This document shows positions 10,129 through 46,085 of a stretch of 64,000 nucleotides of DNA, in pieces. The stretch comes from Octopus sinensis (lineage: Eukaryota): NCBI RefSeq assembly GCF_006345805.1, contig NC_043020.1, positions 4,650,001-4,714,000 of the forward strand, written 5' to 3'. The position numbers and the translations under genes are program-made. Below the pieces are notes generated by a model. It was given only the letters and a program-made list of their open reading frames with translations. It searched no databases and was not told the DNA's origin. Numbering within the stretch: position 1 is the stretch's first letter; every line of letters starts with the position of its first letter.

Positions 10129-12173
10129 GGCTCCAGTCGTTTAGTGTTCTTTACTCACCAGTAGAAGTTGTCACGCTGGTGTGCAGCGGCCGAAAATTGT
10201 AATAGAAAGAGGCTCTACTGTAAGGTAAGACGTTTTGCTTTTTGGGTCCAGTGGGTTCCGTTGTTTGTGAGATTTATTTTTTGTACAAGCAAGGAGTCCC
10301 CACTGGATTCTGGGCTTTAGGTCTGCCTGCGGTAAAGCAGTTTGTTTTTCTCACTTAATTGTGAGAACTGCTTTGTGGAGGCGTGTCCCGCTTCCAATTT
10401 AATCTGTTCCTGTTTAACTTCGTGGAAGTTTTTTTGGAAAAACAAACAATTTCAAGGAATTGGACAAGAAATTAAGAAAAATTGTGAAGGCCGGGAGTAC
10501 CGTGTGGCCGAAAATTATTTGTTTTTGCTGTTTTGAACTGTCGTTCTCTTCTTCTGTCTTTTATTTTTGAAACACTATATTGAACTGTTTATTTTAATTT
10601 TTTCTTCCTTTTTGTTAAGACTTTCTTTTTGTTTTCTTTATTATTTGAATTTTTTGTGGACTGTCTTTAAAACTTTTAATTTTTCACATGGCGAAAACCA
10701 AACTTACAAAACGGAAAATAACACCTCCCCCAAAATGGTTAGAATAATTTTAAAGGAAGACAATGGTGTTGAGGACTTACTCCAAGTCCCTCGACACTAT
10801 AGCCGTCTTCCAGAATAAAATGATTGAAAGGGATTATATGCCAGCTATTAAATATATTTCTCGGGGAGTCAAATATACAACGGTGTGGTTGCTGTTTGGC
10901 TCTCCCGGAGAAGCTTGCGAATTCGCGAGCCAGCCCCTGGAGTGCAAGGAAATTTTGTTCCTTCCCACTTATTGTGGGAAGAAGTTGACGAGGGCTTGGG
11001 TTTGCCACCCGGAATTGAGCCCGAGTGGATAGAAGATACTAACCGCCGGGGTCTGGGTGGCAGCAGTACCAAGCTCCTCAATGTGAATATTCTGCCTGCG
11101 GCTGATTGGGAGGGGTCAAAAACTGTTTTGACCCTATGGACCCAATGAGCCGAAAATCTGGTATTTCCAGATTTTTTGAGAATGGCTGGGTCTAGGTATC
11201 CGGTGATGCTTGAAGGACACCACCCCCAAGTGCCACCTGTGCCTGGAACCGGGTCAAATCAGAAAGGACTGCCCTAAGGACTAAAATAAGGTCCCGGAGC
11301 AGTTGATAAAAATACCGCTCCCTTCTCACTCATTGGAGGGAGAGGAGAAAGTCGAGGAGGTGGAAACCTCAAAAAAGGAAAAAGACCAAAGGTGGGCAAC
11401 AATGGTTGCCCACCGAAGGATCCGAGGACTGCTGGAGAGAGGGAGGATCTGCTGGACAAGGCTGATGAACTTTACCCTCTTGTGGCTAAAAGGAAGAAAA
11501 AAAAGGAAAAATGGGACATCGCCGGCGGTTTGTAATACACTGCCAGTGTGTCCCGAATCAACTTTGGTGGGAGTTGTGTCACCAAAGATGGAAATTTTAC
11601 ATCCTCACCCCCGTGATATGGAGAAGGAATTTGTGGACGTCTTTCATAAGGGAGGGACAGTAGAGCGCTGTGTCAAGATGCTTAAAACGAAGGGCCGAAG
11701 GGAGGGGATTCAGTCCTGCAGGGAGGACTCTGACTGGCCTTCGCAGGTGGCTGCGAAGGTCATGAGGGAGAACGGATAATGGACTCCTACCTCGAGGATA
11801 CCTTCAGATTTATGCTAAATTGGCCCGACTTGGCGTCGTCCAGGTGTTTGGCTGAGGCGAGTAGTCTTGTCGGGTAGGAAGATTATTTCACCGATTCATA
11901 AATGGACTTGTGTAAGAGGTTTGTTGCCTCACAATGGCTTTGTATGACGTAAATGTAAGAGGTCAGTTGCCTCCTTAATGTGTTATTATGTAAGAAGTTT
12001 GTTGCTTCAATATGTTTTATAAAGAACAATGTGCTCCTCGGTAAACAGCTATCGGCGGACGTTGCTGTTGTCCTCATTATTATCATATCGTTAATCATTC
12101 CATCTCATTGTGTCCTTGTCCAGCCCGCAGCTTCCTTTCTTTGTAAGGCCCTTGTGGCCAATTGACTGAATAA
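10129..12173 (+). mobile_element. ORF1-only Tx1-like element E1 (decayed ORF1 10688-11877)
   Basis: ORF1 remnants SRGVKYTTVWL, LPTYCGKKL, CHLCLEPGQIRKDCP knuckle; no EN/RT; flanked by 14-bp TSD. Confidence 0.75.
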
Positions 12174-12188
12174 AAGAAGCTTGCTTCC

Positions 12189-14161
12189 GCACATGCATTG
12201 TCAGTGTTTATCTTTACACTGAAAGAAGTGGCTACGCTGGTTTGCAGCGTGGCGAGTTAGGTGAAGCTCAACTGTAAGGTAGGACGTTTGTTTTGGGGGA
12301 TTCAGTGGGGGTTTGTTGTTTGGTGTATATTTTTTTCAAGCAAGAAATCCTCACTGGATCCCGAGAATTTTTCTGTCTGCTGTTGGGTATTTTAATTTCC
12401 TTTAACACGAATTATTTTGGGGGCATACCCCGCCTCCAAATATTTGTAAAATTTGATTTTTTTAACTGTTCCTGTTGCTACCTGTTGATAGTTGTCGGAA
12501 GACTTGTGGATTGTTTTGGGAGGTATCCAGCCGCCAAAAACTTATGAATTTGTTCCTGTTGTGGTGTGGCGACCAGTTAGGGCTGGAGTACATTCATGGT
12601 CGGAAGATTTTGTGTCTGCTGTGTTCAATCTGTTTCTGAACTGTTTCCTCTCATCCTGCCTTTGAACTTTCCTTGAACTCTTTTTTCAGGAATATGGCAG
12701 AAAAAAAGACACTGTTCTGGAGTGGGAGATTGTCCCGCCCAAAGAGTGGTTAAAAGACTTAGAGGAAAGGACGGTTATGTTGAGGATATATTCAAAGTCA
12801 CTCGACACCATCGCCGTCTTTCCCAAAATCGAGATAGAAAAAGAGTTGGCAGAGCATCTAGGGGTGTCAAGTATTCAACGGTATGGCTGCTATCTGATAC
12901 CCCTGTGGTGGCTCGTAGGTTTGCGAGCCAGCCCTTAGAGGGCAAGGAAATTTTGTTTCTTCCCACTTATTGTGGGAAAAAGTTGGCGAGAGCTTGGGTC
13001 GCAGATTGCCACCCGGGATGGAACCCAAATGGATAGAGGACACTATCCGCCGGGGTCTGGGTGGCAGCGGACCCAAGCTACTTAATGTCAAAATGTTACC
13101 AGCAGCTGATTGAGTTGGGTCAAAAGCTGTTTTGATCCTGTAGACCCAATCATCTAAAAATCTGTTGTTTCCAGATTTGCTAAGAATGGCTGGGAACAGG
13201 TATCCGGTAATGTTTGAGGGACGCCTCCCCAAGTGCCACCTGTGCCTAGCCACATTATAAAGAACTGTCCCCAGGACCAGAGCAAGGTCCTAGAACAGTT
13301 AGTGGCAAAAGAGTCGACCCCTCCCCAGTTGGAGGGAGAGATGGAAATGGTCGAGAAGGTGAAAACCTCCCCAAAAAGGCTGTAAAAGGAAGAAGGTTGG
13401 CAACCACTGTTGCCCACCGAAGGATCCTGAGGCTACGGGAGGGAAGGAAGACCTTCCGGATAAGGTGGAGGAACTCCACCCTCCAGTGGTACAAGGAAAG
13501 AAAAAAGAAGAAAACCGGGACATTGCCGGCGGTTAGTAATATACTACCAGCGTGTCCCGAAACCCCGTCGGTGGAAATTGTGCCACCGACGGAAGAAAAT
13601 GTGGCCCCTTCCTATTCGATGGACGAGAAATTTATAATCCTCTACACAAGGGAGGGGCTTTAGAGAACTGTTAACAAAAAAAAGGCCGGGGGGAAGGGGT
13701 TCTATCCTGCACTGAGAACCCTGATTAGCCTCCGCAAGTAGCTGCAGAGGTTAAAAGGGAAACCGACTTGTGCAGGATAATGAACTCCTTCCCCGAGGAT
13801 ATATTTAAATTCATACTAAAGTGTCCCGACTTAGCACCATCGAGGTGCTTGAATAAGGCAGTGTGCCTTGTCGGGCATAGATGTAAGAGGCTTTAAGGCC
13901 TCGAGTTGTGACTTTTGGGGGAAAAAAGTTTAGAGGCTTAGTGCCTCATTTTGTAAGGACGTTGAGCACATTTTGGAATTAATATAAAAGGTTCATCACC
14001 TCATTTGTGATGAACAATGTTTTCGGGAGGCAGCGATCGGCGGGCGTCCTTTGTCTTCCCCCATTAATATCATCTATTTGTTTTCATTGATCTCATTTTT
14101 GTATATTGTCCAGCCAGCAATTGCTTCTGTATAAAGCCCTTGTGGCTAATTTTATGAAATA
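12189..14161 (+). mobile_element. ORF1-only Tx1-like element E2 (decayed ORF1 from 12694), paralog of E1
   Basis: Same motifs (SRGVKYSTVWL, LPTYCGKKL, GRLPKCHLC); homologous 5' and 3' UTRs; flanked by 14-bp TSD. Confidence 0.75.
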
Positions 14162-14399
14162 AAGAAGCTTGCTTCAGAACCACATGTTTCCGGGTTCAAT
14201 CTCGCTGCGTGGCATCTTGGGCAAGGGTCTTCTACTATAGCCTCGGTCCGATTAAAGCCTTGTGAGTGGATTTGGTAGACTGAAACTGAAAGAAGCCCAT
14301 TGTATATGTATGTGTGTGAGTTTGTGTCTGTGTTTGTCGCTTGACACCAATGTTGGTATGTTCACGTCCCCATAATTTCGTGGGTCGGCTAAAGAGCTC

Positions 14400-15688: not shown

Positions 15689-15775
15689 CTACAATTACAT
15701 AAATGTGTTGAGTGGGAAGTTATATATCTTTATATATATAAAACTGAGAATGTGTGTCTGTCTGTCTGTGTGTTT

Positions 15776-16419: not shown

Positions 16420-16558
16420 GCGTGTCGGAAATTTACCCACGTGTGTTGTTATCTGTGATTAGACGTTGAAATTTTGTTGTGTAAAGTGATTAATATCGCG
16501 CAAGGCATTTGCCTCCACGTTTGGAAACCTTCTGAAGAGGTGAATTGACCCTCTAGTC

Positions 16559-17946
16559 ATGGCGACTTACGCGGGGGTCACGGAAAAATAATAATGATTC
16601 GGCAATAATCGTGAAGGATGTTTTCTTTGAGAAAAGTAAAATCAAAGAATATGAAAAGCTATTCAAAGGGAGGGTGATAGCGTGAAGCTAATCCCCCCCG
16701 CGAAAGCAAAGGAGGACAAGGAAAACAAAACTGTAACGTATAGAACCCAGGACAAAAGTACAAAGAAACTGGCAAGAGTGGAGATAGCAGAGATCGAAAA
16801 ATGTCTGGGAGACATAATGGATAAATCGACCTACGTGAGTAGAGGAAAAAATTTGGTACGGTGGAGGTGAGATGTGCAACGGAAGAAATTGCAGCCTCAC
16901 TGGCTACCACTGTTCTAAGAGCGGAAACATTTATAATGTGGCCCTCATACAAGGGAAGAAGAGGGGTCCGGGTTAAAATCCCGAATATACCCCCAGAAGT
17001 AAAAACAGAATGGCTGGCAACAGCTATTCTAGGAGCAGCAGAAGAGGAAGTGGAGGTGGAATCCTTTAAGGAGTCCAACGCAGTAAATTGGAGAGGATAT
17101 GGGGTAGAACTGTGTTTGATGGCACAAAAGAGGACATTGAAAGGTTCCCCTATAGAATAGAAATCGAAGACGAGAAAACCCTCAGTGTAATTGTAGAGGG
17201 AAGAAAGCCAAACTGCTACTTGTGCGGGACAAGGGGGCACATTAAAAAAGAGTGCCCGTTATATGAATTCATGGCGGAGTATGAGAAGGAAAATGAGAAA
17301 AGAAGAATACGGGAAATGAAAAAGAAAACATAGAAAAGGAGACAAACAACAAGAGAAAGGAAATAATAAGTCAACGAAGGAAAAAGAAATAAAAGAAAAG
17401 AAAGAAATAGAACCAAAACAGAGTCAGGAAAAGAAAAGAAAAAGAAACAAAACAGGAAAAAACAAGAGAGAGAACAGAACCAAACGAAAAGAAAAGACGG
17501 CACACAAAAAGAAAAAGAAAAGAACATAAACACGAGAGAAAGAGAGAACAGACAAAGAACCAAAAGACAAGAGAAGGAAGAAGAAAGAAAAGAAGGCAAA
17601 AAGAGAGAAGAGAGAAACAAAGAGAGGAGAACAAGGAAGAAATAAGCCCGAAAAGAAAACGAGAGAAAACGTAGGACGGAAACAAGATTACTACAAGTTA
17701 ATAACCTTCCATTTCAGCCCCGAAATGAAGGAATTGACATGTAGTATGGAGGGACATGTGTGGGTCAACAGGATGACTGATCAGTGGCAGGAGACTGCTC
17801 TGATCCCCGAAGAAAGAGTCGCTGAGTTCCTCAGAGCAGCTGGAGAGAGTGTAATTTTTTACACGGGTGTTCGAGTGAAAGAGCGGCTGCCTGAGGGCTC
17901 AGTGATTGACTTTAGAGACTTGAAAAGTATTATGGAATACGTGTGA
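16559..17946 (+). CDS. Type A ORF1, copy A1 (frameshifted as assembled)
   Basis: MATY start, CYLCGTRGHIKKEC knuckle, C-terminal ...DLKSIMEYV*. Confidence 0.7.
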
Positions 17947-18329
17947 GATTGTGAGAGGAGAGAGAAGAAAGAAGAGAAAAAGAAAAAAAAAAATGTGAAC
18001 TATAGGTGACGAAAATGTAACCTCTCGATTCCGGGGATCGAGTGGGCATTTGCATCTCATTGTAAATATTCTTTCATTTGTCATTTTTATTTTTATTTTT
18101 TCCCTTCTTGTCATTTCGCTTTCTTATTTTAAGTTCCCCGATTGTATTGTCCCCTCTATGTTCGCCCCTTGTGGGTAGTAATAAAATCAGCGTGTCGGAA
18201 ATTTACCCACGTGTGTTGTTATCTGTGATTAGACGTTGAAATTTTGTTGTGTAAAGTGATTAATATCGCGCAAGGCATTTGCCTCCACGTTTGGAAACCT
18301 TCTGAAGAAGGTGAATTGACCCTCTAGTC

Positions 18330-19720
18330 ATGGCGACTTACGGGGGTCACGGGAAAGAATAATAATGATTCGGCAATAATCGTGAAGGATGTTTTCTTTG
18401 AGAAAAGTAAAATCAAAGAATATGAAAAGCTATTCAAAAGGGAGGGTGATAGCGTGAAGCTAATCCCCCCCGCGAAAGCAAAGGAGGACAAGGAAAACAA
18501 AACTGTAACGTATAGAACCCAGGACAAAAGTACAAAGAAACTGGCAAGAGTGGAGATAGCAGAGATCGAAAAATGTCTGGGAGACATAATGGATAAATCG
18601 ACCTACGTGAGTAGAGGAAAAAATTTGGTACGGTGGAGGTGAGATGTGCAACGGAAGAAATTGCAGCCTCACTGGCTACCACTGTTCTAAGAGCGGAAAC
18701 ATTTATAATGTGGCCCTCATACAAGGGAAGAAGAGGGGTCCGGGTTAAAATCCCGAATATACCCCCAGAAGTAAAAACAGAATGGCTGGCAACAGCTATT
18801 CTAGAGCAGCAGAAGAGGAAGTGGAGGTGGAATCCTTTAAGGAGTCCAACGCAGTAAATTGGAGAGGATATGGGGTAGAACTGTGTTTGATGGCCACAAA
18901 AGAGACATTGAAAGGTTCCCCTATAGAATAGAAATCGAAGACGAGAAAACCCTCAGTGTAATTGTAGAGGGAAGAAAGCCAAACTGCTACTTGTGCGGGA
19001 CAAGGGGGCACATTAAAAAGAGTGCCCGTTATATGAATTCATGGCGGAGTATGAGAAGGAAAATGAAGAAAGAAGAATACGGGAAATGAAAAAGAAAACA
19101 TAGAAAAGGAGACAAAACAACAAGAGAAAGGAAATAATAAGTCAACGAAGGAAAAAGAAATAAAAGAAAAGAAAGAAATAGAACCAAACAGAGTCAGGAA
19201 AAGAAAAAGGAAAAGAAACAACAGGAAAAAAACAAGAGAGAGAACAGAACCAAACGAAAAGAAAAGACGGCACACAAAAAGAAAAAGAAAAGGAACATAA
19301 AACACGAGAGAAAGAGAGAACAGACAAAGAACCAAAAGACAAGAGAAGGAAGAAGAAAGAAAAGAAGGCAAAAAGAGAGAAAGAGAGAAACAAAGAGAGG
19401 AGAACAAGGAAGAAATAAGCCCGAAAAGAAAAACGAGAGAAAACGTAGGACGGAAACAAGATTACTACAAGTTAATAACCTTCCATTCCAGCCCCGAAAT
19501 GAAGGAATTGACATGTAGTATGGAGGGACATGTGTGGGTCAACAGGATGACTGATCAGTGGCAGGAGACTGCTCTGATCCCCGAAGAAAGAGTCGCTGAG
19601 TTCCTCAGAGCAGCTGGAGAGAGTGTAATTTTTTACACGGGTGTTCGAGTGAAAGAGCGGCTGCCTGAGGGCTCAGTGATTGACTTTAGAGACTTGAAAA
19701 GTATTATGGAATACGTGTGA
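18330..19720 (+). CDS. Type A ORF1, copy A2 (frameshifted as assembled)
   Basis: Same protein in pieces across frames. Confidence 0.7.
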
Positions 19721-20104
19721 GATTGTGAGAGGAGAGAGAAGAAAGAAGAGAAAAAAGAAAAAAAAAATTGTGAACTATAGGTGACGAAAATGTAACCTCT
19801 CGATTCCGGGGATCGAGTGGGCATTTGCATCTCATTGTAAATATTCTTTCATTTGTCATTTTTATTTTTATTTTTTCCCTTCTTGTCATTTCGCTTTCTT
19901 ATTTTAAGTTCCCCGATTGTATTGTCCCCTCTATGTTCGCCCCTTGTGGGTAGTAATAAAATCAGCGTGTCGGAAATTTACCCACGTGTGTTGTTATCTG
20001 TGATTAGACGTTGAAATTTTGTTGTGTAAAGTGATTAATATCGCGCAAGGCATTTGCCTCCACGTTTGGAAACCTTCTGAAGAAGGTGAATTGACCCTCT
20101 AGTC

Positions 20105-21489
20105 ATGGCGACTTACGCGGGGGTCACGGGAAAGAATAATAATGATTCGGCAATAATCGTGAAGGATGTTTTCTTTGAGAAAAGTAAAATCAAAGAATAT
20201 GAAAAGCTATTCAAAAGGGAGGGTGATAGCGTGAAGCTAATCCCCCCCGCGAAAGCAAAGGAGGACAAGGAAAACAAAACTGTAACGTATAGAACCCAGG
20301 ACAAAAGTACAAAGAAACTGGCAAGAGTGGAGATAGCAGAGATCGAAAAATGTCTGGGAGACATAATGGATAAATCGACCTACGTGAGTAGAGGAAAAAA
20401 TTTGGTACGGTGGAGGTGAGATGTGCAACGGAAGAAATTGCAGCCTCACTGGCTACCACTGTTCTAAGAGCGGAAACATTTATAATGTGGCCCTCATACA
20501 AGGGAAGAAGAGGGGTCCGGGTTAAAATCCCGAATATACCCCCAGAAGTAAAAACAGAATGGCTGGCAACAGCTATTCTAGGAGCAGCAGAAGAGGAAGT
20601 GGAGGTGGAATCCTTTAAGGAGTCCAACGCAGTAAATTGGAGAGGATATGGGGTAGAACTGTGTTTGATGGCCACAAAAGAGGACATTGAAAGGTTCCCC
20701 TATAGAATAGAAATCGAAGACGAGAAAACCCTCAGTGTAATTGTAGAGGGAAGAAAGCCAAACTGCTACTTGTGCGGGACAAGGGGGCACATTAAAAAGA
20801 GTGCCCGTTATATGAATTCATGGCGGAGTATGAGAAGGAAAATGAAGAAAAGAAGAATACGGAAATGAAAAAGAAAACATAGAAAAGGAGACAAAACAAC
20901 AAGAGAAGGAAAATAAGTCAACGAAGGAAAAAGAAATAAAAGAAAAGAAAGAATAGAACCAAAACAGAGTCAGGAAAAGAAAAAGGAAAAAGAAACAACA
21001 GGAAAAAAACAAGAGAGAAAGAACCAAACGAAAAGAAAAGACGGCACACAAAAAGAAAAAGAAAAGGAACATAAAACACGAGAGAAAGAGAGAACAGACA
21101 AAGAACCAAAAAGACAAGAGAAGGAAGAAGAAAGAAAAGAAGGCAAAAAGAGAGAAAGAGAGAAACAAAGAGAGAAACAAGGAAGAAATAAGCCCGAAAA
21201 GAAAACGAGAGAAAACGTAGGACGGAAACAAGATTACTACAAGTTAATAACCTTCCATTCCAGCCCCGAAATGAAGGAATTGACATGTAGTATGGAGGGA
21301 CATGTGTGGGTCAACAGGATGACTGATCAGTGGCAGGAGACTGCTCTGATCCCCGAAGAAGAGTCGCTGAGTTCCTCAGAGCAGCTGGAGAGAGTGTAAT
21401 TTTTTACACGGGTGTTCGAGTGAAAGAGCGGCTGCCTGAGGGCTCAGTGATTGACTTTAGAGACTTGAAAGTATTATGGAATACTGTGA
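20105..21489 (+). CDS. Type A ORF1, copy A3 (frameshifted as assembled)
   Basis: Same protein in pieces across frames. Confidence 0.7.
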
Positions 21490-35519: not shown

Positions 35520-35527
35520 GGTAAGTA

Positions 35528-38500
35528 ATGGATTACATTTATGTTGGTTGTTTGAATGTGCGCGGCCTGGGAGCAGGCTGGAAGCAAGGTCGCTTCCTGC
35601 ATGATATCAGGTCGCGTAATTTAGATGTTATTGTTGCTACAGAAACCCGGTTAGAGGGGCCAAGAGGTCTACTCCCGCTGTTTGACGGCTACGAGAGTTT
35701 TTTCTCTCCTGGCAGTCCTACAGGCGGGGTGGGGTGTTGGTCCTATTAAAAAGAAACCGGGTTTCTGAGAAAAAGTTAATTTTTGCAGATCCAGAAGGTA
35801 GGCTGGTCGTTATGGATTTGACGTTCAGTAATGGTAAAGTTATCAGACTGGTTGCAATTTACGCACCCAACCATACAGGGCAAAGTGATTATTTTCGTGA
35901 ACTAGAAAACTTTCTTGGTACTTCGCATTCATTAGTGGTGCTAGGAGACTTTAACACAATTTGCAAAGCGGATGTAGATTGTGTTGGCTCGCGTCCAGAT
36001 AGAAAAGGCAACAGTGGCTTCATGGAACTGCTAAGCCGCTTTGAGCTAGCAGATCCTTATAGGCTGGAATTTCCGAACGCTCCATTGTGGACATGGTCAA
36101 ACAGCGACGGATCTTCCAGGTCATATTTAGATAGAATACTAATTAGAAAAGTAGACAGTAAAATAGCTAAGTGTCCACAGTTTTACCCGATCAGCTACAG
36201 TGATCATAAAATGGTCACTTGTAAGCTTGACATAGATAAGGTTAAAAATAGAGGATCCGGTTACTGGAAACTTAATACGTCCCTTTTGGCGATTAAGGAG
36301 TACAAAGACCGGATTAGGAATATAATTCAGAGGGCACTATCTGGTACCATCATTAATAACAAATGGTGGTACGCCCTCAAACGAGCCATCAAGTTTGAGT
36401 CTATTAGATATAACATAGGAGTAGTGGCTAGAGAGGCTAGAAGGGAAACTACTCTAGTTAAGGAATTAGAGGAAGCCATGAAAACTGGCTCTGCGGCTCA
36501 GGTGACGTCCAAGAGACTGGTGTTAAACCAGCACCTCGAGGCCAAACACATGGGCTGCATTGTCAGGGCTAGGATCCGCGCAATGGGTTGTGAAGGAATC
36601 AACGCCGTGAGATGGGCCCGAGTGGTGGAAGCTCGGCATGGTAACGATGCCACGATTCGATCTTTGACGAACCAACAAGGTGAGTTGATAAACGAACCCG
36701 AGGAGATGTGTGAGGCCTTTCAGGAGCACTTCGCTCAGCTTTTCGGTGAGTGCGGCGGACTGGATAGGAGGAGGGCCTTTACGGACCTACTCGACGGGCT
36801 GCCGCGCTTATCGGGGCGAGATGCGGAGGGCTGTGAAGGGCCAATCACGCCTGAGGAGGTGGTTGAGGCAATGGCGGACTGCGGCGCGGGCAAGGCGCCG
36901 GGTTTGGATGGTCTACCCTATGAGTTATATAAGAGTATGCCAGACTTGTTCGGGCACCTACTGGCGGAGGTCTATGCGAACTGGCAGCAGAACGGGCTTA
37001 TACCCAGATCTGTGCGCCGGGGAGTAGTGACTCGCGTCAGAAAGGACCCGAGCAAGGGGGAGTGCATTGATAATTTCAGGCCCATCACTCTGCTAAACAC
37101 AGAGTTGAAGATTTTGGCCAAAGTGTTATCGAAAAGATTGGCGCGTGTCGCGGATGGTCTGATCGGAGAGGCACAGACATGTGCCGTTCCGGGCAGATCC
37201 ATTCAGGATAATCTCCATCTAATGCGGTACACTATAGAGGGGTTTAATAGTGATTCTGGCAAGGGTGGGGCACTGGTCCATTTAGACCAATCTAAAGCTT
37301 TTGATAGGGTCGACCATCGTTACCTGGTATCTGCCCTGGCACGGTTCGGGCTGAGCCTTGGCTTCCTCAGGTGGATTATCCAAATTTATGATAACATCGA
37401 CTCGGTAGTTCGGGTGAACGGCTACTTGTCGAAGCCGTTCAAAATCAAACGCTCGGTTCGTCAAGGGTGTCCGCTCTCCCCGCTTTTGTACGTGATGGCT
37501 CTTGAGCCATTACTGCGAAAACCGAGCGGCATCCCGAGACAGCCAGGTAATGGAAAATCAGTGTCAGCGTACGCGGATGACATCACCATCATCGTAACCG
37601 AAATGGACCACCTATGTAAAGTAGGCAAGGCCATAGAGGTTTACGAGACGGTGACAGGAGCAAAAGTTAATCGCGAAAAGTCAGTCGGCTTGCAACTCGG
37701 CACCTGGAGAGGCAAGTCGATGCCTCCTGACAGCGTCGTGGGACGTTGGACGGAGGGTCCGATTAAACTGCTAGGGGTTTGGTTCGGTCCAGACTTCCAA
37801 ATAGAGAAGAATTTGGGCGAGGTATCGAGCAGGGTGGCTGCAGTAGCCAAGACCTGGTCTTGGCGGTGGCTATCCCTGAAAGGGAGGGCGGAGGTGGCGA
37901 ATGTGTTTATCGCATCGGTTATCACCTACCGCCTCTCCGTCGTTCCTTGCCCTGATTCGTGGTCGATCAAGTTGGAAAGACAGCTCTTCTACTTCTTGTG
38001 GAAGGGCGGGAAACCACTTGTGAAACGCTCTACTTGCTGTCAACAACCGTTAAAGGGTGGGCTAGGGATGCCTTGGCTGATGATGCGCAGACATGCGCTG
38101 AGGTTAAGACATCTGTGGCTCTACCTGGATGGTGAACGGGTGTGGTCTTCGCTAGCAAAACTGATGTTTCCCAAGTTCACTAATTTCGGTGGATGGGAAA
38201 CCTGGCTGAATCGTAGATCGAAACTTGGTACTTGGTACACGGAGTGTCGCAAGGCTCTCCTGCTATTCCGTCGCTCGGGCAACGCCTGCGGTGGGGGTTC
38301 CACCACATTCTTCTATAGAGGGTTGGTAGAGGCGGAATGTGAAGATACCTTGGGGGAAACCCTAGGTCTCTACGATAATCAGCTGGCCAGTCTGTTCCGA
38401 CGTACGTTCGAGCCGAGGACACTGGACAACTTCCAGAAGTCTCTGGCATGGCAATGCTACAGAGGAGCTCTACCTGTTCGGGATAAACTCGCAAGGCACG

Positions 38501-38920
38501 GTGGCCAAGACAGTCCGATATGTCCAAGATGCGGGCGGGATAGGGAAACCGTCCCGCACGCTATTGTTCATTGTCCGGACGTGTCTGAGGTGTGGGTTTA
38601 TGCCGAACACCTGTTGTCAGGTACACGAAGAGTACAGCTGTCGACTGAGTCGATTACAAAAATTGACCCACCGGATTTCCTCGTGAATGAAGGTAAGTTT
38701 CGTTTTCTCGTTGTAGTAGCAATTGCGAAAGAGGTGATATGGAAGACGAGAATGAAAGGTTTACAGTCAGGCAAGTTCATCTCCGGCTCTGGTTTGATGA
38801 ATATTTCATCTTTCACCTGAAAAGGAAGATAGGTTGGAGAGAATATGCCTGACTAGGAGAGTGTATGAAGAACGATGGAAGGATGTAGCACGAAAGTTGC
38901 GAGTGAAAGATACAACATAA
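35528..38920 (+). CDS. ORF2 of element C: APE endonuclease, reverse transcriptase, C-terminal CCHC
   Basis: CLNVRGL, GDFN, YLDRI, SDH; KAFDRVDH, RQGCPLSP, YADD; CPRC...HAIVHC; single-base shifts near 35730 and 38800. Confidence 0.9.
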
Positions 38921-39167
38921 ATGTAATACCAAGCGCAACCAAAAGTATCAGTGGGGAGGCGGGGCTCGTGGGGTCCGAGCTAAACCCGCACCCACTCCAC
39001 CCGTAATGTCTTCCGGTCTGTCCCATCATTCGATTTCTGTCCATTTATTGTAATTCATGAAAATTTTTAAATTCGATTTATTGTAAAAACCCATTCGTGT
39101 GTCTGACCCCATCATCAGATTGTATTGTCCCATCTTTGTTCGCCCCTTGTGGGTAATAATAAAACAA

Positions 39168-40950
39168 CGTGTCGGAAATCTACGTGTGTTGTTATCTGTG
39201 ACTAGACGGTGAAATTTTTTCTGTGTAAATTGATTTAATATCGCGCGAGGCGTTTGCCTCCACGTGTGGAAACCTTCCGAAGAAGGTGAATTGACCCTCT
39301 AGTCATGGCGACTTACGCGGGGGTCACCGGGAAAAATAATGATTCGTCGATAATCATAAAGGATGTTTTCTTTGAGAAGGATAAACTCAAAGAATATGAA
39401 AAGCTCTTCAAAAGGGAGGGTGATAGCGTGAAGCTAATCGCCCCCGCGAAAGCAAAAGAGGACAAAGAAAGCAAGACAGTGACATACAGAACCCAAGACA
39501 AAAATACAAAGAAACTGGCAAGAGTGGAGATAGTCGAAATTGAAAAATGTCTGGGAGACATAATGGGGAAAACAACCTACGTGAGTAGAGGCAAGAAATT
39601 TGGTACGGTGGAGGTGAGATGTGCAACGGAAGAAATTGCAGCCTCACTGGCTACCACTGTACTAAGAGCCGAAAAATTTACAATGTGGCCCTCATACAAG
39701 GGAAGAAGAGGGGTCCGGGTTAAAATCCCGAATATACCCCCAGAAGTGAAAACAGAATGGCTGGCAACAGCTATTCTAGGAGCAGCAGAAGAGGAAGTGG
39801 AGGTGGAATCCTTTAAGGAGTCCAACGCGGTAAACTGGAGAGGATATGGGGTAGAACTGTGTTTGATGGCCACAAAAGAGGACATTGAAAGGTTCCCCTA
39901 CAGAATTGAAATTGAAGATGAAAAAACCCTCAGTGTAATTGTAGAGGGAAGAAAACCAAACTGTTACTTGTGTGGGACAAGGGGGCACATTAAAAAAGAG
40001 TGCCCGTTATACGAATTCGTAGCGGAGTGCGAGCAGGAACTTGAAGAAAAGAAGAATACGGTAAATGAAAAAGAAAACATAGAAAAGGAAACAAAACAAC
40101 AAGAGAAAGGAAATAATAAGTCAATGAAGGAAAAAGAAATAAAAGAAAAGAAAGAAATAGAACCAAAACAGAGTCAGGAAAAAAAAAAGGAAAAAGAAAC
40201 AATAGGAAAAAAACAAGAGAGAGATCAGAATCAAACGAAAAGAAAAGACGGCACACAAAAGGAAAAAGAAAAGGAACATAAAACACGAGAGAAAGAGAGA
40301 ACAGAGAAACAACCAAAAAGACAAGAGAAGGAAGGAGAAAGAAAAGAAGGCAAAAAGAGAGAAAGAGAGAAACAAAGAGAGGAGAACAAGGAAGAAATAA
40401 GCCTGAAAAGAAAAATGAAGGAAAACGTAGGACGGAAACAAGATTACTACTACTACAAGTTAATAACCTTCCATTTCTGCCCTGAAATGAAAGACTTGAC
40501 ATGGAATACGGAGGGACATATATGGGTCGACAGGAATACCGATCAGTGGCAGGAGACTGCTCTAATCCCCGAAGAAAGAGTCGCTGAGTTCCTCAGAGCT
40601 GCCGGAGAGAGTGTAATATTTCACACGAAGGTTCGAGTGAGAGAGCGGCCGCCTGAGGGCTCAGTGATTGACTTTAGAGAATTGAAAGCTATTATGGAAT
40701 ATGTATAGAATTGTGAGAAGAAGGAGAAGAAAGAAGAGAAAAAAGAAAATTTTGTGAAATATATGTGACGAAAATGTAACCTCTTGATTCCGGGGATCGA
40801 GTGGACATTTACATCTCATTGTAAATATTCTTTCATATGTCATTTTTTTACTTTTATTTTTTCCTTTTCTTGTCATTCGCTTCCTTATTTTAAGTTCCCC
40901 GATTGTATTGTCCCATCTATGTTCGCCCCTTGTGGGTAGTAATAAAATCA
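39168..40950 (+). mobile_element. ORF1-only element A' (diverged type A)
   Basis: Same layout as the A units; shared 3' tail. Confidence 0.92.
39305..40708 (+). CDS. Intact 467-aa ORF1 (N-terminal domain, CCHC zinc knuckle, K/E/R-rich linker, C-terminal domain)
   Basis: Uninterrupted ORF; CX2CX4HX4C knuckle CYLCGTRGHIKKEC. Confidence 0.9.
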   Translation: MATYAGVTGKNNDSSIIIKDVFFEKDKLKEYEKLFKREGDSVKLIAPAKAKEDKESKTVTYRTQDKNTKKLARVEIVEIEKCLGDIMGKTTYVSRGKKFGTVEVRCATEEIAASLATTVLRAEKFTMWPSYKGRRGVRVKIPNIPPEVKTEWLATAILGAAEEEVEVESFKESNAVNWRGYGVELCLMATKEDIERFPYRIEIEDEKTLSVIVEGRKPNCYLCGTRGHIKKECPLYEFVAECEQELEEKKNTVNEKENIEKETKQQEKGNNKSMKEKEIKEKKEIEPKQSQEKKKEKETIGKKQERDQNQTKRKDGTQKEKEKEHKTREKERTEKQPKRQEKEGERKEGKKREREKQREENKEEISLKRKMKENVGRKQDYYYYKLITFHFCPEMKDLTWNTEGHIWVDRNTDQWQETALIPEERVAEFLRAAGESVIFHTKVRVRERPPEGSVIDFRELKAIMEYV

Positions 40951-41175
40951 CATGGCGGAAAGCAAATCGCGTGTGTAGTGAGTTATTATATTTTGCCGTC
41001 GTATATATTTTCTCCGTTATATTCTACTGTGTGTCTAACTGTCTTTGTTTATTGTTGTACAACTGTTGAAGTCAGCCTTCGTGCGAGGGATTCGTGTTGG
41101 TGTTCAGCCCTCCGTGGGGGAAAAACTATCATTATTGCGGCTTGTGCCAAGGGCTTGTTAAGCCAGTTGTCGGAG

Positions 41176-42466
41176 ATGGACTCCCCCATCTCATATCCAC
41201 CTGTGTCTAGTGATGCAGGATCACCGGCGGTGTCGCCAAAGAAAAAAGATATTCCAGCACCAGCGAAAAAATTTTCAGAAGTAGCTGGTAAGAAAATTAA
41301 AAAATTTAACGTTGAAGACCTAAAGAAATATGCGGACTGTGTGACAAAAAGGGCACGGAAGTAACAGTGGTTACAAACGCCCAAAAACAGGAAGAAATTG
41401 CAAAAAGAAGAATAATTTATAAGACCTTCAATATAACAAGCAAATCGATACAAAAAATAGAGGAAAAAAAATCGAAAATTGCTTAAAGCCGATAATGGAT
41501 AAGATCACATACATCAATAGAGGAAAGAAATACGGCACAGTGGAGGTGAGATTCACAACAGAGGAGGTAGCCAAAAAGCTATCTATGGAACCAATAAAAG
41601 TGGAGAATATTGTTCTCCTCCCCCTGTATAGAGGAAAAAGAACATCAAAGATCACTATGAATAATATTCCGCCAGAAGCGGATGCCGAATGTCTGGTGGC
41701 AGCAGTTATGGTACGCCTGGAGGAAAAAATAAACATCCTCCAGGCCACAGTAGAGGAGGAAGAATTCTGGAAGGGGCAGCGGATAATAATAGCCATCTAG
41801 GCAGAAATACAAACCCTGGAAGAAATTCCAGAGACTCTAAAAATAAGCGAAGAAGATAGAGTCACAGTCTTCGTAGAGGGCAGAAAGCCGAGGTGCTTCG
41901 GCTGCGGTAAGAAAGGGCATGTAAGGGCAGAATGCCAACCCAAACCGCAGGAAGCAGCTCAGCCAGGTGGAAAAGCAGAAGAGGTGTCACCAGAAGCAGC
42001 GCCGGGTGGCCCAGAAGGGACGGCTGAAGGTGTGGAGGTGACAGAGGCAGCAGAACCAGTGGCGGAGGAAAAAAGAGCGAGGAAACGAAAAATGAGGAGG
42101 GGTGGTCAAAAATCACTAAAAAAAAAAAGAAAAACTGAAACCACCCCTCCCAAAGTGAACCAAAAGAAGAAAAGAGAGTCGTTGAACTCATTTATGGCCG
42201 TTAAGGCCTCGAACAATAGACTCGGTAATGTGTTGGCAGCTATGGCCAAAGTGGAAAAAATAGGGAAAAAAAATGACTATATATTGTACAGAATAGGCCG
42301 GAAGGATTACGGACGGATAAAGTCCGAATTTTTTCATGACGTGATTCCTCTCAGAATGGATATAACATCTCCATATATATTCGAGGGCCTGCGTCAGACT
42401 CCCCCACGAGGCCCAGAAAAAGAGACAAACAAAGAAGAAAAAGAAAAAACCGAACCACTGATATAA
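41176..42466 (+). CDS. ORF1 of element D (disrupted as assembled)
   Basis: MDSPISY start, RGKKYGTVEVRF, CFGCGKKGHVRAEC, ends ...KTEPLI*. Confidence 0.75.
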
Positions 42467-42474
42467 GATAAGTA

Positions 42475-45400
42475 ATGGATTACATTTATGTTGGTTGTTT
42501 AAATGTGCGCGGCCTGGGAGCAGGCTGGAAGCAAGGTCGCTTCCTTAATGATATCAGGTCGCGTAATTTAGATGTTATTGTTGCTACAGAAACCCGGTTA
42601 GAGGGGCCAAGAGGTCTACTCCCGCTGTTTGACGGCTACGAGAGTTTTTTCTCTCCTGGCAGTCCTACAGGCGGGGGTGGGGTGTTGGTCCTATTAAAAA
42701 GAAACCGGGTTTCTGAGAAAAAGTTAATTTTTGCAGATCCAGAAGGTAGGCTGGTCGTCATGGATTTGACGTTCAGTAATGGTAAAGTTATCAGACTGGT
42801 TGCAATTTACGCACCCAACCATAAAGGGCAAAGTGATTATTTTCGAGAACTGGAAAACTTTCTTGGTACTTCGCATTCATTAGTTGTGCTAGGAGACTTT
42901 AACACAATTTGCAAAGCGGATGTAGATTGTGTTGGCTCGCGTCCAGATAGAAAAGGTAACAGTAGCTTCATGGAACTGCTAAGCCGCTTTGAGCTAGCAG
43001 ATCCTTATAGGTTGGAATTTCCGAACGCTCCATTGTGGACATGGTCAAACAGCGACGGATCTTCCAGGTCATATTTAGATAGGATACTAATTAGAAAAGT
43101 AGACAGAAAAATAGCTAAGTGTCCACAGTTTTACCTGGTCAGCTACAGTGATCATAAAATGGTCACCTGTAAGCTTGACATAGATAAGGTTAAAAATAGA
43201 GGATCCGGTTACTGGAAACTTAATACGTCCCTTTTGGCGATTAAGGAGTACAAAGACCGGATTAGGACTATAAGTCAGAGGGCACTATCTGGTACCATCA
43301 TCAATAACAAATGGTGGTACGCCCTCAAACGAGCCATCAAATTCGAGTCAATTAGATATAGCATAGGAGTTGTGGCTAGAGAGGCTAGGAGGGAATCTAC
43401 TCTAGTTAAGGAATTAGAGGAAGCCTTGAAAACTGGCTCTGCGGCTCAGGTGACGTCCAAGAGACTGGTGTTAAACCAGCACCTCGAGGCCAAACACATG
43501 GGCTGCATTGTCAGGGCTAGGATCCGCGCAATGGGTTGTGAAGGAATCAACGCCGTGAGATGGGCCCGAGTGGTGGAAGCACAGCATGGTAACGATGCCA
43601 CGATTCGATCTTTGACGAACCAACAAGGTGAGTTGATAAACGAGCCCGAGGAGATGTGTGAGGCCTTTCACGAGCACTTCGCTCAGCTTTTCGGTGAGTG
43701 CGGCGGACTGGATAGGAGGAGGGCCTTTACGGACCTCCTCGACGGGCTGCCGCGCTTATCGGGGCAAGATGCGGAGGACTGTGAAGGGCCAATCACGCCT
43801 GGGGAGGTGGTTGAGGCGATGGCGGACTGCGGCGCGGGCAAGGCGCCGGGTTTGGATGGTCTACCCTATGAGTTATATAAGAGTATGCCAGACTTGTTCG
43901 GGCACCTACTGGCGGAGGTCTATGCGAACTGGCAGCAGAACGGGCTCATACCCAGATCTGTGCGCCGGGGAGTAGTGACACTCGTCAGAAAGGACCCGAG
44001 CAAGGGGGAGTGCATTGATAATTTCAGGCCCATCACTCTGCTAAACACAGAATTGAAGATTTTGGCCAAAGTGTTATCGAAAAGATTGGCGCGTGTCGCG
44101 GATGGTCTGATCGGAGAGGCACAGACATGTGCCGTTCCTGGCAGAACCATTCAGCATAATCTCCATCTTATGCGGTACACTATAGAGGGGTTTAATAGCG
44201 ATTCTGGCAGGGGTGGGGCACTGGTCCATTTAGACCAATCTAAAGCATTCGATAGGGTCGACCATCGATACCTGGTATCTGCCCTGGCACAGTTCGGGCT
44301 GAGCCTTGGCTTCCTCAGGTGGATTATCCAAATTTATGACAACATCGACTCGGTAGTTCGGGTGAACGGCTTCTTATCGAAGCCGTTCAACATCAAGCGC
44401 TCGGTTCGTCAAGTGTGTCCGCTCTCCCCGCTTTTGTACGTGATGGCTCTTGAGCCATTACTGCGAAAACTGAGCGGCATCCCGAGACAGCCAGGTAGTG
44501 GAAAATCGGTGTCAGCGTACGCGGATGACATCACCATCATCGTAACCGAAATGGACCACCTACGTAAAGTAGGCAAGGCCATAGAGGTTTACGAGACGGT
44601 GACAGGAGCAAAAGTTAATCGCGAAAAGTCAGTCGGCTTGCAACTCGGCACCTGGAGAGGCAAGTCGATGCCTCCTGACAGCGTCGTGGGACGTTGGACG
44701 GAGGGTCCGATTAAGTTGCTAGGGGTTTGGTTCGGTCCAGACTCCAAATAGAGAAGAATTGGGGCGAGGTATCGAGCAGGGTGGCTGCAGTAACCAAGAC
44801 CTGGTCTTGGCGGTGGCTATCCTGAAAGGGAGGGCGGAGGTAGCCAATGTGTTTATCGCATCGGTTATCACCTACCGCCTTTCCGTCGTTCCTTGCCCTG
44901 ATTCGTGGTTGATCAAGTTGGAAAGACAGCGCTTCTACTTCTTGTGGAAGGGCGGGAAACCACTTGTGAAACGCTCTACTTGCTGTCAACAACCGTTAAA
45001 GGGTGGGCTAGGGATGCCTTGGCTGATGATGCGCAGACATGCGCTAAGGTTAAGACATCTGTGGCTCTACCTGGATGGTGAACGGGTGTGGTCCCCGCTA
45101 GCAAAACTGATGTTTCCCAAGTTCACTAGTTTCGGTGGATGGGAAACCTGGCTGAATCGTAGATCGAAACTAGGCACATGGTACACGGAGTGTCGCAAGG
45201 CTCTCCTGCTATTCCGTCGCTCGGGCAACGCCTGCGGTGGGGGTTCCACCACATTCTTCTATAGAGGGTTGGTAGAGGTGGAATGTGAAGATATCTTGGG
45301 GGAAGCCCTAGGTCTATACGATAATCAGCTGGCCAGTCTGTTCCGACGTACGTTTGAGCCGAAGACACTGGACAACTTCCAGAAGTCTCTGGCATGGCAA

Positions 45401-45868
45401 TGCTACAGAGGAGCTCTACCTGTTCGGGATAAACTCGCAAGGCACGGTGGCCAAGACAGTCCGATATGTCCAAGATGCGAGCGGGATAGGGAAACCGTCC
45501 CGCACGCTATTGTTCATTGTTCGGACGTGTCTGAGGTGTGGGTTTATGCCGAACAGCTGTTGTCAAGCACACGAAGAGTACAGCTGTCGACTGAGTCGAT
45601 TACAAAAATTGACCCACCGGATTTCCTCGCGAAAGAAGGTAAGTTTTGTTTTCTCGTTGTAGTAGCAATTGCGAAAGAGGTGATATGGAAGACGAGAATG
45701 AAAGGTTTACAGTCAGGCAAGTTCATCTCCGGCCCTGGTTTGATGAATTATTTCATCTTTCACCTGAAAAGGAAGATAGGGCTGGAGAGAATATGCCTGG
45801 CTAAGAGAGTGTATGAAGAACGATGGAAAGATGTAGCACGAAAGTTGCGAGTGAATGATACCACATAA
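42475..45868 (+). CDS. ORF2 of element D: APE endonuclease, RT, CCHC (frameshift near 44750)
   Basis: 758-aa and 369-aa ORFs; YADD; RQVCPLSP variant of the conserved QG motif. Confidence 0.88.
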
Positions 45869-46085
45869 ATGTAAAACTAAACGAAACTAAAAGTATCAGT
45901 GGGGAGGCGGGGCTCGTGGGGTCCGAGCTAAACCCGCTCCCACTCTATCCGTAATGTCTTCCGGTCTGTTCTCCATTCGATTTTTTCTATTTTGTAATTT
46001 TCTGTAAAACCCATTCGTGTATCTGACCCCACATCAGATTGTATTGTCCCATCTATGTTCGCCCCTTGTGGGTAATAATAAAACA

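What the first reader, a model, noticed from the sequence alone, without database searches (positions are those of the whole stretch)
12147..46073. Conserved 3'-terminal hairpin with a CTTGT loop and compensatory stem changes across two separate Tx1 systems
Seen: GCCC-CTTGT-GGGT in A, A', C and D (e.g. 18164-18176, 46061-46073), GCCC-CTAGT-GGGT in B (32492-32504), GGCC-CTTGT-GGCC in E1 (12147-12159) and AGCC-CTTGT-GGCT in E2 (14135-14147), each shortly upstream of AATAAA at the 3' end. Within the big array a ~50-bp tail (GATTGTATTGTCCC...AATAAAA) is the only extended sequence clearly shared by ORF1-only and autonomous elements. Known: stringent LINEs such as eel UnaL2 recognise a 3' stem-loop. 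Inference: this is the RT recognition signal that licenses the non-autonomous partners.
Basis: partly seen in the sequence, partly recalled or inferred. Interest (0 to 1): 0.8.

Follow-up and report, generated by a model that had tools for sequence, protein, structure and literature searches.

The report
Conserved 3'-end hairpin of octopus LINEs
A tiny RNA hairpin (4 base pairs, loop CUUGU) sits just before the last AAUAAA of 15 tandemly inserted jumping-gene copies in this octopus window and of distant relatives elsewhere, keeps its pairing while its letters change, and is probably the tag by which the elements' reverse transcriptase picks its template, a known kind of signal seen here in a new lineage.

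Summary
All 15 plus-strand elements end with a 4-bp stem and 5-nt loop (CTTGT, or CTAGT in B) 3-10 nt before a terminal AATAAA. There are 13 units in a head-to-tail array at 16420-46086 and two in a SINE at 10129-14163.

I extended it beyond the window. ORF2 relatives at about 40% identity from other assemblies carry the hairpin at the same place with other stems (AGGC/GCCT, TGGC/GCCA, TGAC/GTCA, CGGC/GCCG). Across 11 tails, 44 of 44 cells pair and 3 of 4 pairs show two-sided changes. Slid controls pair 27-48%. ORF2 relatives at 25-32% identity lack it.

ORF1-only (A, A', B) and ORF2-bearing (C, D) units share only the 47-48-nt tail (92-98% identical), although their ORF1 proteins are 31-39% identical.

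Weak points: the stem is marginal (-1.3 to -5.1 kcal/mol) and is not the predicted minimum-energy fold in the octopus tails. The motif is too small for blind detection. Function is untested.

Best reading: a "stringent" LINE 3'-tail recognition hairpin, most likely bound by ORF2p. This is a new member of a known kind. Tx1-clade membership is consistent with the data but not tested phylogenetically. Moderate interest.

The parts
10129..12175 (+). E1, an ORF1-only element inserted in a tRNA-derived SINE. Conserved E-type tail 12016-12175, hairpin GGCC-CTTGT-GGCC at 12147-12159, AATAAA at 12169-12174.
12189..14163 (+). E2, an ORF1-only element about 72% identical to E1. Tail 14004-14163, hairpin AGCC-CTTGT-GGCT at 14135-14147, AATAAA at 14158-14163.
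10116..10128 (+). Target-site duplication copy 1 (GAAGCTCGCTTCC) inside the SINE head. Copies 2 and 3 lie at 12176-12188 and 14164-14175.
16420..18189 (+). A1, an ORF1-only unit. Tail 18140-18189, hairpin GCCC-CTTGT-GGGT at 18164-18176.
18190..19964 (+). A2. Tail 19915-19964, hairpin 19939-19951.
19965..21731 (+). A3. Tail 21682-21731, hairpin 21706-21718.
21732..23503 (+). A4. Tail 23454-23503, hairpin 23478-23490.
23504..25285 (+). A5. Tail 25236-25285, hairpin 25260-25272.
25286..27064 (+). A6. Tail 27015-27064, hairpin 27039-27051.
27065..28848 (+). A7. Tail 28799-28848, hairpin 28823-28835.
28849..30623 (+). A8. Tail 30574-30623, hairpin 30598-30610.
30624..32517 (+). B1, a diverged ORF1-only unit (~71% nt identity to A). 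Tail 32469-32517, hairpin GCCC-CTAGT-GGGT at 32492-32504.
32518..33904 (+). B2, a B-type unit with an internal deletion. Tail 33856-33904, hairpin 33879-33891.
33905..39167 (+). C, with ORF1 fragments plus an APE/RT/zf-RVT ORF2 (35734-38820; the N-terminal 69 aa are in another frame at 35528-35734). Tail 39118-39167, hairpin 39142-39154.
39168..40950 (+). A', 91% identical to A, with an intact 467-aa ORF1 carrying a CCHC knuckle (39305-40708). Tail 40901-40950, hairpin 40925-40937.
40951..46086 (+). D, with ORF1 fragments plus ORF2 split by a frameshift (42475-44751 and 44759-45868). Tail 46037-46086, hairpin 46061-46073.

Best explanation
The hairpin is a selected secondary-structure element of the sense-strand RNA of one lineage of L1/Tx1-group non-LTR retrotransposons. 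It has a 4-bp stem, an invariant C-G closing pair and a pentaloop C-N-N-G-U (usually CUUGU). It lies a few to about 50 nt upstream of an AAUAAA that is at or within about 20 nt of the end of the DNA copy. The copies have no poly(A) tail.

The most likely mechanism is that of 'stringent' LINEs. The element's ORF2 protein recognises the shape of the stem and the conserved loop bases. This selects the RNA and positions its 3' end for target-primed reverse transcription. ORF1-only families (A, A', B) have kept or captured the same 47-nt tail, so they can use the ORF2p of C/D-type elements in trans. E1/E2 carry their own stem versions and presumably use a different partner.

Shown: the position, the conservation, the compensatory changes, the tail sharing and the absence of poly(A).
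For: (1) All 15 elements in the window carry the hairpin at the same place.

(2) Seven lineages have six different stems that all pair: A-D GCCC/GGGU, E1 GGCC/GGCC, E2 AGCC/GGCU, L002/6/7 AGGC/GCCU, L004 UGGC/GCCA, L086 UGAC/GUCA and L087 CGGC/GCCG. ORF2 identity between window and outside families is about 40%, and 46-66% among the outside families. In the 11-tail alignment 44 of 44 cells pair and 3 of 4 pairs have two-sided changes. The outer pair shows 5 pair types. The covariation score is 0.877 against 0.19 in shuffles (0 of 500 reach it). Slid controls pair 27-48%. RNAalifold predicts the same helix.

(3) In about 813 kb of background, 3 of 3 extra pairs around a C-N5-G core occur with probability 0.063. 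Perfect 4-bp + CTTGT hairpins are rare and unplaced in 25-32% identity relatives.

(4) The G.U pair in all 13 A-D copies would be an A.C mismatch on the other strand, which points to the sense RNA.

(5) The tail is 92-98% identical between ORF1-only and ORF2-bearing units, yet their ORF1 proteins are only 31-39% identical and the rest of their UTRs do not align. A tail that does not co-diverge with ORF1 argues for a shared reader, namely ORF2p.

(6) There is no poly(A) at any junction, so initiation must be positioned by something other than an A-tail.

(7) In the outside group the hairpin is in the MFE fold. It is followed at once by a second hairpin of 7 pairs, of which 6 show two-sided changes, that ends at AAUAAA.

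(8) Precedent exists: UnaL2 (PMC1636434), ZfL2 ORF2p binding its stem-loop (PMC4176376) and an L1-clade plant LINE (PMC3472496).
Against: The isolated hairpin is weak (-1.3 to -5.1 kcal/mol). Its pair probabilities are 0.01-0.32 in the octopus tails, where other pairings win. No tail folds better than its shuffles, with z-scores from -1.3 to +0.8.

Only about 7 semi-independent lineages were available. Four of the outside examples were found with a search that required a perfect stem, which inflates the 100% pairing figure.

Within families the stem never varies, so there is no within-family covariation.

The L087 loop (UUGAC) departs from C-N-N-G-U.

A model built only from outside tails ranks the E2 and E1 hairpins 2nd and 5th in the window, but at E = 0.05-0.4, and it misses the A-D type.

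No binding, probing or mobility data exist. Both ORF2 copies in the window are frameshifted.
Confidence: 0.55

Rival explanations
1. The hairpin is an auxiliary element for 3'-end formation or RNA stability. It would present or space the terminal AAUAAA for the host cleavage/polyadenylation machinery, or protect the 3' end, rather than being read by the element's RT.
For: It always lies just upstream of AAUAAA. The sequence 20-50 nt downstream of AAUAAA, in the head of the next unit or in the target, is often G+U-rich (0.43-0.70), like a downstream element of a poly(A) site. In the outside group a second hairpin ends exactly at AAUAAA.
Against: The spacing from hairpin to AAUAAA ranges from 3 to about 50 nt. 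Host factors would not require a 47-nt tail kept at 92-98% identity between partner families whose other UTR sequence does not align. The DNA copies carry no poly(A).
Confidence: 0.15
2. The hairpin is an ORF1p (RRM/CCHC nucleic-acid chaperone) binding or packaging site. The unpaired UUGU-type loop and the upstream UUGU repeats would be read by the zinc knuckle.
For: Every element encodes an ORF1 with a CCHC knuckle. TTGT occurs 3-6 times in the 200 nt upstream of the hairpin, against about 1.6 expected, including GATTGTATTGT directly upstream. The E1/E2 3' UTRs carry further hairpins with U/G-rich loops.
Against: The ORF1 proteins of A/B and C/D are only 31-39% identical, yet their tails are 92-98% identical. 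A cognate ORF1p site would be expected to co-diverge with ORF1.
Confidence: 0.12
3. The tail acts at the DNA level as part of the insertion target. The endonuclease would recognise the resident tail or junction, so new copies land next to old ones and build the arrays. The dyad symmetry would then belong to a protein-DNA site.
For: Head-to-tail arrays occur here and in three outside families. Twelve of 13 units are flanked by like 13-mers.
Against: The first E insertion had no resident tail; it went into a SINE. Copies L006 and L007 of the outside family stand alone, not beside another copy, and still keep the hairpin. A duplex protein site would conserve its letters rather than covary. The G.U pair works on one strand only.
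Confidence: 0.08
4. The pairing is a chance palindrome around a conserved primary-sequence motif (CCTTGTG) and has no structural role.
For: The stem is only 4 bp and thermodynamically marginal. Minimum-energy folds of the octopus tails do not contain it.
Against: All seven lineages pair at 3 of 3 variable positions, where chance gives 0.063 per lineage. At least six two-sided changes are seen and no broken cell.
Confidence: 0.04

Closest known systems
3'-tail stem-loop of stringent L2-clade LINEs (eel UnaL2, zebrafish ZfL2-1/2) and their partner SINEs
   Same: A short stem-loop lies in the last tens of nucleotides of the 3' UTR. The stem letters are free while the loop bases are conserved. The tail is shared with a non-autonomous partner. 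In those systems the stem-loop is required for mobility and is bound by the ORF2p region between endonuclease and RT (PMC1636434, PMC4176376).
   Different: There is no sequence or covariance-model similarity (Rfam scans empty). The clade differs (L1/Tx1-type ORF2 with zf-RVT). The stem here is only 4 bp with a CNNGU pentaloop. The element ends around AAUAAA instead of in short tandem repeats. The partner is an ORF1-coding element, not a SINE. Function here is untested.
Stringent L1-clade LINEs of plants and green algae (LINE1-1_ZM, L1-1_CR; Ohshima 2012, PMC3472496)
   Same: These are L1-group elements whose conserved 3' end forms a hairpin with compensatory stem mutations and conserved loop bases, and which share their 3' end with non-autonomous partners.
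   Different: The hosts differ (monocots and Chlamydomonas versus octopus and unidentified marine organisms). The loop differs (UCU with a flanking CGAG there). L1-1_CR/SINEX-3_CR end in poly(A) and so do most plant L1-clade LINEs (PMC3472496), whereas no poly(A) is seen here.
Tx1-clade target-specific LINEs (Tx1L, Keno, Kibi, Koshi, Tx1-Mar)
   Same: They have an APE + RT ORF2, show target-specific insertion including into other transposons, and make repeated insertions at one target (PMC4494074). E1/E2 sit in one site of a SINE with a 13-bp duplication. O. vulgaris has 13 recently active L1-Tx1 families (PMC13282606).
   Different: No RT phylogeny was done here. I found no report of a conserved 3' hairpin, of poly(A)-less ends or of ORF1-only partners for Tx1 elements in the papers searched.
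ORF1-only LINE derivatives: mammalian HAL1 and Drosophila HeT-A with TART
   Same: A gag/ORF1-only element depends on an RT-encoding relative (HAL1: PMC5753468). HeT-A/TART also form mixed head-to-tail arrays (own knowledge; titles).
   Different: A/B are not recent deletion derivatives of C/D, since ORF1 is 31-39% identical. No telomeric repeats occur in the window. HAL1 relies on poly(A), not on a specific tail.

Membership tests
Stringent-type LINE 3'-tail recognition stem-loop (functional class) | The stem-loop lies within the terminal part of the 3' UTR of the element. | tested here: met
   The hairpin ends 13-16 nt from the element end in all 15 window copies. It is 18-50 nt before the terminal AAUAAA in outside relatives.
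Stringent-type LINE 3'-tail recognition stem-loop (functional class) | The structure is kept by compensatory changes while loop bases are conserved. | tested here: met
   44 of 44 cells pair, 3 of 4 pairs show two-sided changes, and loop C1, G4 and U5 are kept in 10 of 11 tails.
Stringent-type LINE 3'-tail recognition stem-loop (functional class) | The tail is shared between the autonomous element and its non-autonomous partner. | tested here: met
   The 47-48-nt tail is 92-98% identical between A/A'/B and C/D, with nothing else comparable shared.
Stringent-type LINE 3'-tail recognition stem-loop (functional class) | The stem-loop is required for retrotransposition and bound by the cognate ORF2p. 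| not testable with these tools
   This needs binding and mobility assays.
UnaL2/ZfL2 tail family (homology) | Sequence or structure similarity to the described tail RNA, and terminal short tandem repeats after the stem-loop. | tested here: not met
   No Rfam family matched at gathering score or at E <= 10 in the 3' UTRs. The elements end AATAAAA+TCA/CAA with no repeats.
Tx1 clade of non-LTR retrotransposons | ORF2 has an APE endonuclease, an RT and a C-terminal zinc-binding domain; ORF1 has a CCHC knuckle. | tested here: met
   Pfam finds Exo_endo_phos, RVT_1 and zf-RVT in C/D ORF2, and zf-CCHC in A' ORF1. These features are shared with L1, so they are not diagnostic.
Tx1 clade of non-LTR retrotransposons | Target-specific insertion. 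| tested here: inconclusive
   It is met for E1/E2: two insertions in one site of a SINE, each with a GAAGCTYGCTTC(C) duplication. For the A-D array the original target is not visible, and only the like 13-mers flanking 12 of 13 units point that way.
Tx1 clade of non-LTR retrotransposons | The RT domain clusters with reference Tx1 elements in a phylogeny (RTclass1). | not tested
   No reference Tx1 sequences could be obtained; the supplement of PMC4494074 is not held. The named homologues are only 'hypothetical protein'.
HAL1-like ORF1-only derivative | The element encodes ORF1 only and arose by loss of ORF2 from its partner. | tested here: inconclusive
   ORF1-only is confirmed: A' has a 467-aa ORF and no RT. 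A/B ORF1 is only 31-39% identical to C/D ORF1, so they are not recent deletion derivatives.

The most novel reading that the evidence does not exclude
The CNNGU pentaloop hairpin plus terminal AAUAAA is the defining cis-module of a so far undescribed, deeply diverged lineage. The ORF2 proteins are about 40% identical between the octopus and outside families. The lineage would comprise poly(A)-less, tandem-array-building L1/Tx1-group retrotransposons of marine animals. In it the RT reads a minimal 13-nt hairpin, and unrelated gag-only families have captured the tail. That would give an animal example for the idea that L1-group elements were ancestrally 'stringent'. It would also provide one of the smallest LINE recognition RNAs for structural work.
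Probability: 0.35. Interest if true: 0.65.

Novelty: new member of a known kind. Interest (0 to 1): 0.5.

Why it matters
How a LINE reverse transcriptase chooses its template is understood for only a few elements, mostly L2-clade fish LINEs, R2 and SART1. Mammalian L1 is 'relaxed' and uses poly(A). A 13-nt hairpin with clean covariation in an animal L1/Tx1-group lineage, shared with ORF1-only partners, offers a compact and easily mutated substrate for ORF2p binding and retrotransposition assays. It also bears on whether stringent recognition is ancestral in the L1 group (PMC3472496). In practice the motif plus the terminal AAUAAA marks the true 3' ends of these octopus elements and their non-autonomous partners. 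That helps annotate the L1-Tx1 families reported as recently active in Octopus vulgaris (PMC13282606).

Tried and rejected
1. Single-sequence folding. The hairpin is in the MFE for the outside tails L002, L004, L006 and L007, but not for L086 or L087 and not for any octopus tail. Z-scores are not significant. The support is therefore comparative only.

2. Alternative long-range pairing of the conserved UUGUCC box with GGGUAAU (A-D) or GGCCAA/GGCUAA (E). No compensating change supports it, and E1 acquires a mismatch, so I rejected it as the conserved fold.

3. Alternative register in A-D (CCC/GGG with a UUGU tetraloop, -4.1 versus -3.7 kcal/mol). It cannot be formed by the other lineages.

4. 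Covariance model R1 from all tails. In the window, all hits with E < 1e-3 are the 15 element ends, and one extra hairpin inside the E2 3' UTR follows at E = 0.002. In the loci, the hits are the known ends. These sequences were in the training set.

5. Model R2, built only from outside tails. E2 and E1 rank 2nd and 5th, but with E = 0.05-0.4, and the A-D type is missed. The motif is too small for blind discovery.

6. ORF2 relatives at 25-32% identity (L008-L012, plus 73 JGI metagenome loci). They have no positional hairpin.

7. Rfam at gathering and E-value thresholds gave nothing.

8. The viral-contig scan gave nothing.

9. L001, the closest relative at 57% identity, and L088 end before the 3' tail.

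10. Tx1 phylogeny was not possible.

11. Telomere idea for the array: there are no TTAGGG runs in the window.

12. A hit at 1302-1320 (AAGC-TTCGT-GCTT) has no element context and no AATAAA, so I treated it as background.


Full report
**What is in the window**

The sequence is eukaryotic, with microsatellites and several LINE reverse transcriptases. The intact ORF1 at 39305-40708 has 85-94% identical hits only in Octopus vulgaris, on at least five chromosome-scale contigs. The window therefore comes from that species or a close relative, and the A family is dispersed rather than only locally duplicated.

On the + strand there is a head-to-tail array of 13 units at 16420-46086:
- Eight A units, 98.4-99.4% identical to A2 and ORF1-only.
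- Two B units, about 71% identical to A and ORF1-only.
- C, with ORF1 fragments plus an APE/RT/zf-RVT ORF2.
- A', 91% identical to A, with an intact 467-aa ORF1 carrying a CCHC knuckle.
- D, built like C.

Both ORF2 copies are broken by one frameshift.

A second, unrelated pair of ORF1-only units sits in tandem inside a tRNA-derived SINE. These are E1 (10129-12175) and E2 (12189-14163), about 72% identical to each other and 23-28% identical to A' in ORF1. Each is flanked by a 12-13-bp duplication, GAAGCTYGCTTC(C).

**The observation**

All 15 units end with a perfect 4-bp stem and a 5-nt loop, followed after 3-10 nt by AATAAA and then at most 4 more bases. None has a poly(A) tail. The exact core CCCTTGTGG occurs 13 times, only on the + strand and only at these ends.

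The tail claim also holds. Between ORF1-only and ORF2-bearing units the only well-conserved shared sequence is the 47-48-nt tail GATTGTATTGTCCC...AATAAAA, at 92-98% identity. Their ORF1 proteins share only 31-39% identity, and the rest of the 3' UTRs do not align.

**Beyond the window**

ORF2 of C has one 57% relative, whose contig stops before the tail. It also has a large group of about 40% relatives in ENA, JGI and TARA assemblies. I fetched the DNA for six of those lineages. Each contig that reaches the 3' end carries a 4-bp/5-nt hairpin at the homologous place, after a C-rich tract and before AAUAAA, with a different stem:

| Source | 5' stem | Loop | 3' stem |
|---|---|---|---|
| L002, L006 | AGGC | CTTGT | GCCT |
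| L007 | AGGC | CTCGT | GCCT |
| L004 | TGGC | CATGT | GCCA |
| L086 | TGAC | CTTGT | GTCA |
| L087 | CGGC | TTGAC | GCCG |

A genome bin labelled Arenicella turned out to consist of tandem arrays of the same eukaryotic family. It adds eight more tail subtypes, all with AGGC-C(T)(T/C/A)GT-GCCT. ORF2 relatives at 25-32% identity (L008-L012 and 73 metagenome loci) have no such element.

**Is it more than chance?**

- In a gap-free alignment of 11 tails, 44 of 44 cells form standard pairs.
- Three of the four pairs show changes on both sides.
- The outer pair has five pair types.
- The covariation score is 0.877 against 0.19 +/- 0.08 in shuffles, and 0 of 500 shuffles reach it.
- Sliding the 3' partner by 1-3 columns drops pairing to 27-48%.
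- RNAalifold predicts the same helix.
- In about 813 kb of background, three extra pairs around a C-N5-G core occur with probability 0.063. Seven lineages all doing so is very unlikely by chance.

I count at least six two-sided substitutions and no broken cell.

One caveat applies. Four of the outside examples were found with a search that demanded a perfect stem, so the 100% figure is partly built in. Against that, each of these hits fell exactly at the element's 3' end. The one case found by position alone (L087) also pairs.

The G.U outer pair in all 13 A-D copies would be an A.C mismatch on the opposite strand. This points to the sense RNA.

**What does not support it**

- The isolated hairpin is weak, at -1.3 to -5.1 kcal/mol.
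- In the octopus tails other pairings win, and the hairpin's pair probabilities are 0.01-0.32.
- No tail folds better than its shuffles.
- The competing pairings (the UUGUCC box with the 3' half-stem, or a shifted register in A-D) have no compensatory support, and one acquires a mismatch in E1.
- A covariance model built only from outside tails ranks the E2 and E1 hairpins 2nd and 5th in the window. Its E-values are 0.05-0.4, and it misses the A-D type.

The motif is too small to be discovered blind. Its reality rests on position plus covariation.

**Extra anatomy**

In the outside group a second hairpin of 7 pairs follows the first directly and ends at AAUAAA. Six of its seven pairs show two-sided changes. 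The octopus elements lack it. They instead have UUGU repeats (GAUUGUAUUGU) just upstream, and the same decamer ATTGTATTGT lies about 95 nt upstream in L002 and L007.

**Mechanism**

The best-supported reading is the 'stringent' LINE model: the element's ORF2p reads a 3' stem-loop to choose and position its template. This is established for UnaL2 and ZfL2 (PMC1636434, PMC4176376). A hairpin with compensatory changes has been described in an L1-clade plant LINE (PMC3472496).

The tail does not co-diverge with ORF1. It is kept nearly identical between partner families whose other UTR sequence does not align. The copies lack poly(A), so initiation needs another positioning cue.

None of this is a functional test. 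I put about 0.85 on 'selected RNA hairpin' and about 0.55 on 'ORF2p recognition signal that licenses the ORF1-only partners'. The rivals are a 3'-end processing aid, an ORF1p site, a DNA-level target for array building, and chance. They are listed with their evidence in the report sections.

**Comparison and novelty**

The element works like the known stringent-LINE tail hairpins, but it is not homologous to them. Rfam finds nothing, and there are no terminal repeats.

Tx1 membership fits the domain set and the site-specific insertion of E1/E2 into a SINE. It was not tested by phylogeny.

I found no paper describing this hairpin, poly(A)-less ends or ORF1-only partners in Tx1/L1 elements of molluscs. 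I therefore file it as a new member of a known kind, of moderate interest.

The surrounding biology may be the more interesting lead. It comprises mixed arrays of gag-only and RT-bearing elements, the same array habit in distant relatives, and insertion into a SINE.

Noticed in passing
window 10085-14520: E1 and E2 are inserted one after the other at a single site in the tRNA-like head of a SINE. From memory I recognise it as the abundant octopus SINE. Each insertion has a 12-13-bp target duplication, GAAGCTYGCTTC(C), at 10116, 12176 and 14164. This indicates site-specific insertion into another retroposon. ARAGORN does not call the rejoined head a tRNA, and no other copy of the SINE is in the window.
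   Followed up: partly
window 16420-46099: Twelve of the 13 array units are flanked on both sides by like 13-mers: GCGTGTCGGAAAT, or CATGG(C/A)GGAAAGC for D. A' is the exception, with type 1 on its left and type 2 on its right. The 13-mer could be a target-site duplication, the elements' own 5' end, or evidence that two arrays fused. This is unresolved.
   Followed up: partly
window 46087-46400: The sequence after D starts like D's own 5' end and has weak ORF1 similarity (46218-46361, 35% over 48 aa, E 3e-5). It is probably a decayed, 3'-truncated further element that marks the old edge of the array.
   Followed up: partly
L002/L003, L004/L005, L086; L089-L131: Relatives with about 40% ORF2 identity also form head-to-tail arrays in other assemblies, with periods of about 6.8 and 6.5 kb. 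One TARA contig is circularly permuted. A GTDB genome bin labelled 'uncultured Arenicella sp.' (CAXXMW01) consists largely of such eukaryotic LINE arrays, so it is mis-binned contamination.
   Followed up: partly
L002 10159-10176 and homologous sites in L004, L006, L007, L089-L131: A second hairpin of 7 pairs directly follows hairpin 1 and ends at AAUAAA. Six of its 7 pairs show two-sided changes across 12 tail subtypes. It is absent from the octopus elements.
   Followed up: yes
window 11910-12010 (E1) and 13860-14012 (E2): The E-family 3' UTRs contain a series of further small hairpins, often after GUAAG, with U/G-rich loops. Examples are GAGG-UUUGUUG-CCUC, GAGGC-UUAGU-GCCUC at 13934-13948, and UGCC-UUGUCG-GGCA. 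They may be repeated binding sites.
   Followed up: no
window 18024-18042 and 8 further copies (A and B units): A conserved 6-bp hairpin, CTCGAT-T(T/C)CGGGG-ATCGAG, lies about 120 nt upstream of the terminal hairpin. It is shared by the A and B families but not by C or D.
   Followed up: no
window 18180-18230 and every other unit junction: The AATAAA at the end of one unit is followed 20-50 nt later by a G+U-rich stretch in the head of the next unit. The poly(A) signal therefore appears to be split across the junction. Transcripts would be expected to read 15-30 nt into the neighbour or target.
   Followed up: partly
window 16420-30623: The eight A units are 98.4-99.4% identical to A2, but each has its ORF1 broken at different places, mostly in the A-rich Lys/Glu-coding part. 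These breaks may be real decay or homopolymer indel errors of the assembly.
   Followed up: no
window 2048-5179 (-), 50916-53021 (-), 59310-60725 (-): Three other RT-coding LINE fragments lie on the minus strand. They are 24-29% identical to C/D ORF2 and so belong to other families. None carries the hairpin.
   Followed up: partly
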